A stretch of 63,849 nucleotides of DNA, the filler included, from Octopus bimaculoides (lineage: Eukaryota): the NCBI RefSeq assembly GCF_001194135.2. It is 10 parts of 10 records of this genome, joined end to end, with 100 filler letters (N's around TTAATTAATTAA, not from the genome) between each part and the next. Parts side by side here need not be neighbours in the genome. Positions count along the whole stretch, not along the records: positions 61,109 to 62,637 come from NC_068985.1; 9 more parts are not named here. The stretch is one strand, 5' to 3'. The notes under the pieces are model-generated. The model did no database searches, was not told the origin of the DNA, and worked only from the letters and a program-made list of their open reading frames with translations. Positions 62,002-62,637 of the stretch are shown piece by piece. The translations under genes and the position numbers were made by a program. The stretch's first letter is position 1. The number at the start of each line of letters is the position of its first letter.

Positions 62002-62637
62002 ATGCAGTCACAGAATTCCAGAGCTATCTTTAAATTTGGGCCAATGAGACCTTTACGCCCTACGTCTACAATGCAATCGATGCTAGGTAAACCTAATAAC
62101 AAGCAAGCAGTAGTACCCATCCATGGAAAAAATCATTTTTCCTCCAGTATCATAACAGCAGCACCACCACAAGAACAGAATAAATTGCTTGGTGAGACTC
62201 TCTTTCCATTGATTCGAAATATGTATCCAGATAAGGCTTACAAGATCACTGGTATGTTGTTGGAGCTTGACAGAGATGAGCTGTTACCTTTGATAGACTC
62301 TCATGAGTTGTTGCAGGCTAAAGTTGAGGAAGTTGTGATCGTGTTGCAGGCACACAAGGCTATGAAGGATGCTACCACTGACCTCAAGACTATTCATGGA
62401 CATGAACCTCTTATCTCCAGTAGGATAGGAACAATTCCACCACAAGAACAGAATAAAAGGATTGGTGAGACTCTCTTTCCATTGATTCATAATATGTATC
62501 CAGATAAGGCTGACAAGATCACTGGTATGTTGCTGGAGCTTGACAAGGCTGAGCTGTTACCTTTGATGGACTCTTGTGAGTTGTTGCAGGCTAAAGTTGA
62601 GGAAGTTGTGATTGTGTTGCAGGCACACAAGGCTATT
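62002..62637 (+). CDS. PABPC-derived ORF with two tandem MLLE (PABC, PAM2-binding) domains; 3' end lost in gap
   Basis: Open frame of 212 codons. AAPPQEQNKLLGETLFPLIRNMYPDKAYKITGMLLELDRDELLPLIDSHELLQAKVEEVVIVLQAHKA and a second copy 273 nt downstream match the PABPC C-terminus (AAPPQEQKQMLGERLFPLI...KITGMLLEID...KVEEAVAVLQAH). Polypyrimidine tract plus CAG acceptor at 61962-61985. Confidence 0.85.

What the first reader, a model, noticed from the sequence alone, without database searches (positions are those of the whole stretch)
62002..62637. Stand-alone tandem-MLLE (PABC) protein: a candidate multivalent PAM2-motif decoy
Seen: an unbroken 212-codon frame with two MLLE domains 273 nt apart. 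Both keep KITGMLLE and GE.LF. No RRM is recognisable on this 1.5-kb piece, and the piece breaks exactly at the end of repeat 2, as a longer tandem array would. Known: canonical PABPC has four RRMs and a single MLLE, which binds PAM2 motifs of PAIP1/2, eRF3, PAN3, TOB, ataxin-2, LARP4 and GW182. Inference: an RRM-less multi-MLLE protein could sequester or cluster these deadenylation, termination and miRNA-silencing factors without binding poly(A). I do not know whether such a cephalopod protein has been described.
Basis: partly seen in the sequence, partly recalled or inferred. Interest (0 to 1): 0.7.

Follow-up and report, generated by a model that had tools for sequence, protein, structure and literature searches.

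The report
RRM-less tandem-MLLE gene of octopus
The open frame is the front end of a real, octopus-specific, single-exon gene made only of repeated copies of the partner-docking tail domain (MLLE) of poly(A)-binding protein, with no RNA-binding part. It is annotated but unstudied and evolves fast, and the idea that it soaks up PABP partner proteins is plausible but untested.

Summary
Window 62002-62637 (+) is a 212-codon frame, open to the piece edge, with two Pfam MLLE domains (E=1.2e-45) exactly 273 nt apart.

It is not an assembly artefact. A chromosome-level Octopus vulgaris assembly carries two complete single-exon orthologues with the same leader, the same 91-codon period, 4 and 7 MLLE units, and a conserved stop. 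No RRM lies within 10 kb on either side of the first copy. O. bimaculoides XP_014769105.1 is the 3' part of such a gene.

The leader resembles the PABPC linker, and each unit equals the last ~90 residues of PABPC. The gene therefore most likely began as a 5'-truncated, intron-free (probably retrotransposed) PABPC copy whose tail was then amplified.

Reading frame, unit length and the KITGMLLE helix are under clear constraint:
- 0 stops and 0 indels over ~160 substitutions.
- 3 changes in the signature against 17 expected.

The rest evolves almost neutrally (dN/dS about 0.8). Conserved PAM2-contact residues are also changed: G579 to Y or D in both window units, plus A610V and Q560K. "Stand-alone tandem MLLE" is supported; "PAM2 decoy" remains a hypothesis.

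RRM-less multi-MLLE proteins turn out to be recurrent and uncharacterised in animals.

The parts
61109..62001 (+). Upstream non-coding flank (promoter/5'UTR candidate) of the tandem-MLLE gene. It contains a pyrimidine-rich tract followed by AG at about 61965-61985, just before the ATG.
   Evidence: It aligns to the regions upstream of the O. vulgaris genes. Piece 262-893 is 89.2% identical to the upstream of copy 2, with 4 gap events. Piece 1-154 and 168-259 are 93.5% and 90% identical to sequence about 2 kb upstream of copy 1. There is no Rfam match. The nearest in-frame stop ends at 61932, 23 codons before the ATG.
62002..62637 (+). Open reading frame of 212 codons, cut by the piece edge: the 5' part of an RRM-less tandem-MLLE gene.
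   Evidence: It is colinear without gaps with codons 14-225 of both O. vulgaris ORFs (86% nucleotide identity).
62002..62154 (+). Leader (aa 1-51), predicted disordered, apparently derived from the PABPC inter-domain linker.
   Evidence: pLDDT is below 50 for aa 1-44. The tblastn and phmmer alignments to PABPs extend into it: P0047 residues 155-299 align to L001 14541-14993, and query residue 6 onward aligns to P0245/P0252. It is the fastest-diverging part (81% nucleotide identity between species).
62155..62346 (+). MLLE unit 1 (aa 52-115); KITGMLLE at 62242-62265; Tyr at the Gly579 position.
   Evidence: Pfam best stretch 52-115 covers profile positions 3-66 of 66. Contact-residue map. Orthologous to unit 1 of the O. 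vulgaris genes (86% nucleotide identity).
62347..62427 (+). Inter-unit linker (aa 116-142). It equals the PABPC C-terminal tail (AHKAMKDATTDLK) joined directly to the pre-MLLE segment (IHGHEPLISS...).
   Evidence: Each unit aligns to residues about 272-360 of a 362-aa PABP fragment, that is, to within 2 residues of its C-terminus. pLDDT dips to 55-60 here.
62428..62619 (+). MLLE unit 2 (aa 143-206); KITGMLLE at 62515-62538; Asp at the Gly579 position.
   Evidence: Second Pfam stretch, placed by the 91-codon register. Its 57-aa core is 100% identical to unit 1 of O. bimaculoides XP_014769105.1.
62119..62363 (+). DNA direct repeat, copy 1 of the 273-nt unit.
62392..62636 (+). DNA direct repeat, copy 2 (87% identical to copy 1). 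The piece ends one base later.

Best explanation
The window holds the start codon, leader and first two units of an Octopus-lineage gene that encodes nothing but tandem MLLE (PABC) domains.

Origin (inferred):
- A 5'-truncated, intron-free copy of the 3' end of a cytoplasmic poly(A)-binding-protein mRNA, most likely a retrocopy, kept part of the linker, the MLLE and the C-terminal tail.
- Its last 91 codons were then amplified head to tail in frame.
- The first and last units are old. The inner units are still being gained and lost by unequal exchange, giving 4 versus 7 units in two adjacent O. vulgaris copies.

What selection keeps (shown): the reading frame, the exact unit length and the peptide-binding helix-3 signature KITGMLLE. 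Most other positions drift.

Mechanism (inferred, untested): the product is an RNA-independent, flexible string of peptide-docking modules. It binds PAM2 or PAM2-like motifs and so competes with PABPC for its partners, or clusters them. Affinity or specificity probably differs from PABPC, because several contact residues have changed.
For: A real gene, not an artefact:
- Independent long-read O. vulgaris chromosome OX597818.1 has two complete ORFs with the same leader, the same 273-nt period, 4 and 7 units, and a shared C-terminus ...EYRGQEAATIK(A/G)RGH*.
- O. bimaculoides XP_014769105.1 has 3 units plus a stop.
- The flanks are syntenic.

No RRM:
- tblastn finds none in 21 kb of L001 or in the piece.

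PABPC origin:
- Units are 58-67% identical to human PABPC1 MLLE, and their best non-octopus matches are canonical PABPs.
- Each unit spans PABP residues about 272-360 of 362.
- The leader aligns to the linker.

Intron-free where a mollusc PABP-like gene is split:
- The Sinanodonta gene has introns before the pre-MLLE segment and inside helix 5, at KAKV|DEA.
- About 100 nt right after the stop codon are A-rich (55% A against 31% for the locus).

Constraint:
- About 161-175 substitutions on the unit tree, with 0 stops (5.8 expected, P about 0.003) and 0 indels (about 7 frame-breaking expected from the flank's indel rate, P about 7e-4).
- The signature K580-L588 shows 3 changes against 17.3 expected (P=1.7e-5).

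Ongoing amplification:
- Inner units are 99-100% identical to each other, while first and last units are 73-86% identical to the others.

Fold:
- AF2 plus Foldseek match PAM2-bound PABPC1 MLLE structures.
- Ten of 18 PAM2-contact residues are invariant across the 16 octopus units: T582, M584, L585, L586, E587, K606, E609 and L614 unchanged from PABPC1, with position 588 uniformly Leu instead of Ile. G563, E564 and F567 are kept in both window units but vary among the O. vulgaris units; V613 varies only in O. bimaculoides unit 3 (V->A).
Against: - dN/dS is 0.77-0.86 between species and 0.6-1.0 between old paralogous units.
- Changes are spread equally over codon positions 1, 2 and 3 (39/34/38).
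- Coding identity (86%) is lower than that of the non-coding flank (89%). This is what a drifting sequence looks like.
- Gly579 is replaced by Tyr or Asp in both window units. Other units carry G563S+E564K, F567L, K580E, or H617Q/Y/N.
- No transcript, protein or binding evidence could be obtained here.
- The octopus parent PABPC gene was not recovered, so 'retrocopy' rests on a bivalve proxy.
- The indel-rate estimate rests on only 4 events.
- The window ORF was picked because it is open, which is an ascertainment bias. The O. vulgaris ORFs are the independent observation.
Confidence: 0.6

Rival explanations
1. A decaying retro-pseudogene array. A truncated PABPC retrocopy was amplified as DNA by unequal crossing-over and makes no functional protein. 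The open frame persists because the units are young or are homogenised by gene conversion.
For: - dN/dS is about 0.8-1.0.
- There is no third-position excess.
- Coding divergence is at least as high as flank divergence.
- Near-invariant PAM2-contact residues are lost.
- Inner units are 99-100% identical, which shows DNA-level turnover.
Against: - Zero stops and zero indels over about 160-175 independent substitutions, including first and last units that differ by 25%.
- Start region, stop and C-terminal tail are conserved between species.
- The helix-3 signature is conserved about 6-fold below the unit average.
- Intact ORFs of 417 and 690 codons in O. vulgaris were not selected for being open.
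Confidence: 0.2
2. A functional MLLE platform with a changed ligand. The units no longer bind classical PAM2 but bind PAM2-like or foreign motifs (viral or transposon proteins that mimic PAM2). The gene is a fast-evolving, copy-number-variable decoy in a genetic conflict.
For: - Near-neutral or elevated dN/dS together with strict frame and signature conservation.
- Variation is concentrated at contact positions 560, 563/564, 567, 579, 580, 610 and 617.
- Unit number varies.
- There are precedents. Rrm4 MLLE1/2 have altered pockets and unknown partners (PMC9249222), and coronavirus 229E N protein is crystallised on the PABPC1 MLLE (PDB 7BN3).
Against: - No test for positive selection was possible with two species.
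- Contact columns vary no more than non-contact columns (9 of 18 against 21 of 30).
- No candidate ligand is known.
Confidence: 0.1
3. This is the terminal exon of a larger gene. Upstream exons beyond the sequence examined supply RRMs or another domain, giving an Rrm4-like 'RRM plus several MLLE' protein.
For: - A pyrimidine tract followed by AG lies just upstream of the ATG, and 23 codons are open before it.
- Multi-MLLE proteins with other domains (MIF4G, RRM, F-box) exist in the representative library.
Against: - No RRM-like sequence in 9.7 kb upstream of the first O. vulgaris copy, nor between the copies.
- The in-frame stop lies 9 codons upstream of the first ATG in O. vulgaris.
- Three independent gene models contain only MLLE.
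- The leader is a decayed linker rather than a conserved one.
Confidence: 0.07
4. An assembly artefact: a normal single-MLLE PABPC exon duplicated by misassembly.
For: The piece is a short contig that ends inside the repeat.
Against: - The two copies differ at 13% of bases.
- The same architecture appears in an independent chromosome-level assembly of another species and in an O. bimaculoides protein model.
- The ORF is intron-free and lacks RRMs, unlike a PABPC gene.
Confidence: 0.02

Closest known systems
MLLE/PABC domain of cytoplasmic poly(A)-binding protein (human PABPC1 residues about 544-626; PDB 3KUS, 3KUJ, 3PKN, 1G9L)
   Same: - Same Pfam family, five-helix fold and KITGMLLE signature.
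- 56-61% identity.
- The pre-MLLE segment (EPL..S....PPQEQ) and the C-terminal tail are also recognisable.
   Different: - No RRM1-4 and no conserved linker.
- The domain is repeated 2 or more times here and 4-7 times in orthologues.
- The gene has a single exon.
- Gly579, Ala610 and Gln560 are substituted in the window units.
- It evolves about as fast as its flanking DNA.
Ustilago maydis Rrm4 (three RRMs plus three MLLE domains; Devan et al. 2022, PMC9249222)
   Same: - Several MLLE domains on flexible linkers form a docking platform.
- Some units have an altered pocket: Gly replaced by Ser or Arg, as in O. vulgaris units with G563S.
   Different: - Rrm4 has RRMs and binds mRNA.
- Its MLLEs are old and mutually divergent (17-32% identity to known MLLEs), and they bind PAM2L motifs of Upa1.
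- The octopus units are recent copies of one another and closer to PABPC. Foldseek E is above 1 for the Rrm4 domains.
Uncharacterised metazoan RRM-less 3-4xMLLE proteins (e.g. Saccoglossus LOC100367271, Ptychodera, Diadema, Scyliorhinus, Narcine, Actinia LOC116295046, Desmophyllum OS493_023541)
   Same: - Stand-alone proteins of 205-340 aa that consist only of MLLE domains.
- Position 579 is usually Asp or Glu, as in window unit 2.
   Different: - An old family. Units correspond by position across phyla and are only 26-46% identical to PABPC1 MLLE.
- Octopus units are 58-67% identical to PABPC1 and at most about 47% to these, so the octopus gene arose separately.
Other PABPC-like tandem-MLLE arrays (crinoid Anneissia LOC117122709; unnamed contigs and proteins P0005/L002, P0008, P0241, P0243)
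   Same: RRM-less, with 2-4 PABPC-like MLLE units including the pre-MLLE segment, apparently single-exon arrays.
   Different: - Different repeat periods (for example 82 codons in L002 against 91 here) and unrelated leaders, so they are parallel inventions rather than orthologues.
- The source organisms are mostly unknown.
Arabidopsis MPC (MATERNALLY EXPRESSED PAB C-TERMINAL)
   Same: A gene encoding a PABP C-terminal domain without RRMs. The name is attested; its domain content is from my own knowledge.
   Different: A plant gene with a single domain, imprinted in endosperm, and with no tandem array.

Membership tests
MLLE/PABC domain (Pfam PF00658) | Profile match above the curated cut-off | tested here: met
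   153.7 bits against a cut-off of 27, two stretches, E=1.2e-45.
MLLE/PABC domain (Pfam PF00658) | Five-helix bundle fold | tested here: met
   The AF2 model has two bundles. Foldseek TM is 0.81-0.93 (normalised to the target) and rmsd 1.1-1.9 A to PABPC1 MLLE crystal structures. This is a model, not an experiment.
MLLE/PABC domain (Pfam PF00658) | KITGMLLE signature on helix 3 | tested here: met
   Exact in both window units. ITGMLLE is exact in all 16 octopus units examined.
MLLE/PABC domain (Pfam PF00658) | Canonical PAM2-contact residues (Q560, G563, E564, F567, G579, K580, T582, M584, L585, L586, E587, I588, K606, E609, A610, V613, L614, H617; numbering of PMC2854688) | tested here: inconclusive
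   Window units keep 14 of 18. They change Q560K, G579Y or G579D, I588L and A610V. Each position is at least 95% conserved in 188 canonical proteins.
MLLE/PABC domain (Pfam PF00658) | Binds PAM2 peptides | not testable with these tools
   Needs ITC, fluorescence polarisation or pull-down.
Cytoplasmic poly(A)-binding protein (PABPC) | Four N-terminal RRMs | tested here: not met
   No RRM in the piece, in the complete O. vulgaris ORFs, or in 21 kb around them.
Cytoplasmic poly(A)-binding protein (PABPC) | A single C-terminal MLLE | tested here: not met
   Two units on the piece; 4 and 7 in the orthologues.
Rrm4-type multi-MLLE RNA transporter | RRMs followed by three divergent MLLE domains | tested here: not met
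   There are no RRMs. The units are near-copies of each other. Foldseek E is above 1 to Rrm4 MLLE2/3.
Ancient metazoan stand-alone 3-4xMLLE family | Units orthologous by position to those of hemichordate, echinoderm, shark and cnidarian members | tested here: not met
   Best non-octopus matches of the octopus units are canonical PABPs. Identity to that family is at most about 47%.
Processed retrogene | No introns where the parent gene has them | tested here: inconclusive
   The ORF is continuous across two intron positions of a bivalve PABP-like gene. The octopus parent gene was not recovered.
Processed retrogene | Poly(A) remnant and target-site duplications | tested here: inconclusive
   About 100 nt after the stop codon in O. 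vulgaris are 55% A. Target-site duplications were not searched for. The 3' end is absent from the window.

The most novel reading that the evidence does not exclude
RRM-less strings of MLLE domains are a recurrent, so far undescribed class of animal post-transcriptional regulators. The class would include one ancient family (cnidarians to sharks) and several young PABPC-derived arrays.

The octopus version, with variable unit number, fast-changing contact residues and a strictly kept docking helix, would be an expressed sponge or condensate scaffold. It would titrate PAM2 proteins (PAIP2, eRF3, PAN3, TOB, ataxin-2, GW182) or foreign PAM2 mimics away from poly(A)-bound PABPC in particular tissues.
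Probability: 0.2. Interest if true: 0.7.

Novelty: new variant of a known kind. Interest (0 to 1): 0.5.

Why it matters
MLLE-PAM2 docking is how PABPC recruits the factors that decide translation, termination, deadenylation and miRNA silencing.

The literature I could search names only PABPC, UBR5 and fungal Rrm4 as MLLE proteins, and calls Rrm4 the first protein with several MLLEs (PMC9249222).

A natural protein that is only a chain of MLLE domains would be a built-in competitor or clustering agent for all PAM2 proteins. It would offer a ready-made tool for testing what happens when those partners are pulled off the poly(A) tail.

Such chains were invented several times in animals, which suggests the architecture is useful.

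The octopus case adds a clear origin story (truncated PABPC copy, then in-frame amplification) and an unusual selection pattern: frame and docking helix kept, the rest drifting.

If the gene turns out not to be expressed, it is simply a well-preserved retrocopy array.

Tried and rejected
- Recovering the octopus parent PABPC gene. I searched with the best RRM-bearing hit (P0050), but it turned out to be a beetle PABP and all 120 listed hits were arthropods. I used a bivalve PABP-like gene as a proxy for intron positions instead.
- Finding contigs for the window's own protein (P0003) and for O. bimaculoides XP_014769105.1. Neither is on record. The window's 3' continuation, its unit count and its species could therefore not be fixed. 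O. bimaculoides or a close relative is inferred from the 100% identical 57-aa core.
- Tandem Repeats Finder did not report the 273-nt repeat because there are only about 2 copies. The repeat finder did report it.
- Literature searches for tandem or multiple MLLE, for PABC with cephalopod or retrogene, and for the accession numbers found only the Rrm4 work and nothing on animal proteins.
- Rfam found nothing on the piece.
- LINE ORF1 idea: a LINE endonuclease/RT ORF lies 1.7 kb downstream of O. vulgaris copy 2 on the same strand. I rejected the idea because that LINE is 5'-truncated and lies beyond the duplicated gene unit, and because copy 1 has no RT before copy 2 begins.
- Enrichment of variation at PAM2-contact columns: not seen (9 of 18 against 21 of 30 conserved columns vary).
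- Expression evidence: no Logan-derived octopus cluster appeared among the hits. This is uninformative either way.
- The bacterial promoter/terminator scan was not used because the sequence is animal.

Full report

Yes. Window 62002-62637 (+) starts at an ATG and stays open for 212 codons up to the last base of the piece. The other five frames of the same stretch hold 5-25 stops.

Pfam MLLE (PF00658) matches twice with a whole-protein E-value of 1.2e-45. Both units read GETLF...KITGMLLE. At DNA level the two units are direct repeats, 62119-62363 and 62392-62636, 87% identical and spaced 273 nt apart.

Nothing RRM-like is present on the 1.5-kb piece, and there is no Rfam family.

An AlphaFold2 model built on a 16-sequence alignment shows a disordered N-terminus (aa 1-44) followed by two helical bundles, aa 48-131 and 139-211. 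Foldseek ranks PAM2-bound human PABPC1 MLLE crystal structures first: 3PKN, 3KUJ, 3PTH, 3KTR and others, with TM 0.81-0.93 and rmsd 1.1-1.9 A. A sequence search of the PDB gives the same answer (1G9L, E=3e-24).

**2. What is it?**

The closest proteins in the large collection are:
- O. bimaculoides XP_014769105.1, 'uncharacterized protein LOC106868392' (273 aa, three MLLE units and a stop);
- a UniProt fragment of the same gene;
- an O. vulgaris model named 'polyadenylate-binding 4-like'.

The O. vulgaris locus (chromosome OX597818.1, fetched as L001) contains two neighbouring, complete, single-exon ORFs of 417 and 690 codons. Both begin with the same leader as the window ORF. They contain 4 and 7 MLLE units at an exact 91-codon period, and they end with the same tail ...EYRGQEAATIK(A/G)RGH*.

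The window piece aligns to this locus at about 86% identity in the coding part. In the non-coding flank identity is 89-93%. The window ORF is colinear without a single gap with codons 14-225 of both ORFs.

The core of window unit 2 is 100% identical over 57 residues to unit 1 of the O. bimaculoides protein. The window therefore probably comes from that species or a close relative, and it is the 5' part of a gene whose array continues beyond the contig break. That continuation is inferred.

tblastn with RRM-bearing PABP fragments finds only MLLE units in 21 kb of L001. 'Stand-alone, RRM-less' is therefore supported, and misassembly is excluded.

**3. Where did it come from?**

- Every unit aligns to residues about 272-360 of a 362-residue PABP fragment. 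That span runs from the 'HIQGQEPLTAS' segment before the MLLE to within two residues of the PABP C-terminus.
- The inter-unit junction is therefore the PABP C-terminal tail fused in frame to the pre-MLLE segment.
- The leader aligns, more weakly, to the PABP linker.
- Octopus units are 58-67% identical to human PABPC1 MLLE, and their best matches outside octopus are canonical PABPs.
- A bivalve PABP-like gene (Sinanodonta, L009) has introns before the pre-MLLE segment and inside helix 5, at KAKV|DEA. The octopus ORF runs through both positions uninterrupted.
- In O. vulgaris the stop codon is followed by about 100 nt with 55% A.

The most economical reading has two steps: first a 5'-truncated processed copy of a PABPC mRNA, then in-frame tandem amplification of its last 91 codons. 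This is inference. The octopus parent gene was not recovered.

The unit tree shows that the first unit is orthologous between species (86%) and that the last unit is a distinct old lineage. The inner units are 90-100% identical within O. vulgaris. Copy 2 equals copy 1 plus three extra inner units. The array is therefore older than the species split, and its middle is still turning over.

**4. Is it under selection?**

The picture is split.

Signs of drift:
- Between species, dN/dS is 0.77-0.86 (0.56-0.78 in the MLLE cores). Between old paralogous units it is 0.6-1.0.
- Parsimony changes are equal at codon positions 1, 2 and 3 (39/34/38).
- The coding part is no better conserved than the flank (86% against 89%).

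Signs of constraint:
- About 161 (NJ) to 175 (parsimony) substitutions on the unit tree produced no stop, where 5.8 are expected (P about 0.003).
- They produced no indel either, while the flank shows 4 gap events per 66 substitutions. About 7 frame-breaking events would be expected (P about 7e-4).
- The nine codons K580-L588 show 3 changes against 17.3 expected (P=1.7e-5).

Caveats:
- Counts are small.
- The indel rate rests on four events.
- Inner units may not be strictly orthologous.
- Gene conversion is likely.
- The window ORF was chosen because it is open. The O. vulgaris ORFs are the unbiased observation.

My reading is that frame, unit length and the docking helix are kept by selection, while the rest is weakly constrained or diversifying.

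**5. Would it bind PAM2?**

I used the contact list of Kozlov and Gehring 2010 (PMC2854688).

- The two window units keep G563, E564, F567, K580, T582, M584, L585, L586, E587, K606, E609, V613, L614 and H617.
- They carry Q560K, I588L, A610V and, most notably, G579Y (unit 1) and G579D (unit 2).
- Gly579 is Gly in 181 of 188 canonical single-MLLE proteins in my sample. Its carbonyl hydrogen-bonds the amide of the critical PAM2 phenylalanine.
- Other octopus units carry G563S+E564K, F567L, K580E or H617Q/Y/N.
- Contact columns are not more variable than other conserved columns (9 of 18 against 21 of 30).
- Asp or Glu at position 579 is the rule in the ancient stand-alone multi-MLLE family. From memory, UBR5, whose MLLE binds PAM2 (3NTW), also lacks this glycine. 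The substitutions therefore do not prove loss of binding.

Binding and specificity remain open.

**6. Mechanism**

I commit to the following, with about 0.6 confidence for the whole statement and about 0.3 for the PAM2-competition step alone. The product is an RNA-independent, flexible chain of peptide-docking modules. It competes with poly(A)-bound PABPC for PAM2 or PAM2-like partners, or clusters them.

Rivals:
- A non-functional retrocopy array (0.2).
- A platform with a changed or foreign ligand, in the manner of Rrm4 MLLE1/2 or of viral PAM2 mimicry such as PDB 7BN3 (0.1).
- The last exon of a larger gene (0.07). There is a pyrimidine tract plus AG before the ATG, but in-frame stops lie 23 codons (window) and 9 codons (O. 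vulgaris) upstream, and no RRM is nearby.
- An assembly artefact (0.02).

**7. Comparison with what is known**

It contains bona fide MLLE domains: profile, fold and signature are all met. It is not a PABPC (no RRMs, more than one MLLE). It is not Rrm4-like (no RRMs, and the units are recent copies).

It also does not belong to the ancient metazoan 3-4xMLLE family that I came across in hemichordates, echinoderms, cartilaginous fishes and cnidarians. In that family the units correspond by position across phyla and are only 26-46% identical to PABPC1.

Other PABPC-like tandem arrays exist in a crinoid and in several unnamed contigs, with different periods (82 codons in L002), so they are parallel inventions. 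The 50%-identity representative library lists many more proteins with 2-6 MLLE stretches, some fused to MIF4G, F-box or other domains.

Devan et al. 2022 state that only PABPC1, UBR5 and Rrm4-type proteins had been described as MLLE proteins, and that Rrm4 was the first with multiple MLLEs. My searches found no paper on animal stand-alone multi-MLLE proteins or on the octopus accession numbers.

**8. Verdict**

The 'stand-alone tandem MLLE' reading is supported, and the 'PAM2 decoy' function is untested and somewhat weakened.

Novelty: a new variant of a known kind. It is a known domain in an undescribed, lineage-specific architecture that already sits in databases as an uncharacterised model.

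Interest is about 0.5. The broader pattern, recurrent RRM-less MLLE chains in animals, is the more interesting lead.

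Noticed in passing
Proteins P0103, P0105, P0115, P0094, P0095, P0024, P0037, P0016 (no window coordinates): An apparently ancient family of RRM-less proteins made only of 3-4 MLLE domains (205-340 aa) occurs in hemichordates, a sea urchin, a catshark and a ray, an anemone and corals. All are named 'uncharacterized'. Units match by position across phyla (unit 1 to unit 1, unit 2 to unit 2). They are only 26-46% identical to PABPC1 MLLE and mostly have Asp or Glu at the Gly579 position.
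   Followed up: partly
L002 10001-11398 (ENA ERZ26168041 contig); L003-L007 (Logan contigs); P0006, P0241, P0243, P0242, P0254: Further, seemingly independent PABPC-like tandem-MLLE arrays without RRMs. L002 has three units at a 246-nt period plus a fourth. A complete 162-aa 2xMLLE ORF recurs in at least 5 sequencing runs. A crinoid protein has 3 units. Unnamed proteins have 3, 4, 5-6 and 6 units, one of them 1573 aa long. The source organisms are unknown.
   Followed up: partly
P0244, P0248, P0246, P0249 (representative library): MLLE arrays combined with other domains: MIF4G + MLLE (+ RRMs + MLLE), 4xMLLE + F-box + beta-propeller, and a 7TM receptor + 4xMLLE. Some may be fused gene models.
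   Followed up: no
L001 9743-10996 and 14568-16640: The two O. vulgaris gene copies lie 4.8 kb apart. Their last two units are 100% identical (copy 1 units 3-4 equal copy 2 units 6-7), and their downstream flanks are duplicated. This is either a very recent tandem duplication or two alleles with different unit numbers laid side by side by the assembler.
   Followed up: partly
L001 18343-20919 (+): An 858-aa ORF of a 5'-truncated LINE (endonuclease remnant plus reverse transcriptase) lies 1.7 kb downstream of copy 2. Retrotransposon RT fragments and long TA/CA microsatellites fill the 9 kb upstream.
   Followed up: partly
L001 10997-11100 and 16641-16745: The roughly 100 nt directly after the stop codon of both copies are 55% A, against 31% for the locus. 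There is no AATAAA or ATTAAA within 1.5 kb. This may be a decayed poly(A) tail of the founding retrocopy.
   Followed up: partly
window 61389-61437: An AT-rich imperfect 9-mer repeat (TATCATTAT-like) sits in the upstream flank. A similar stretch occurs in inverted orientation about 1.4 kb downstream of each O. vulgaris gene copy. It is probably low-complexity similarity.
   Followed up: no
window 61965-61985: A pyrimidine-rich tract ending in CAG/AAG lies immediately upstream of the ATG and looks like a 3' splice acceptor. In O. vulgaris the same bases are read as codons (MAFSLF...) of a longer N-terminus, because an ATG is present there (ATC in the window).
   Followed up: partly
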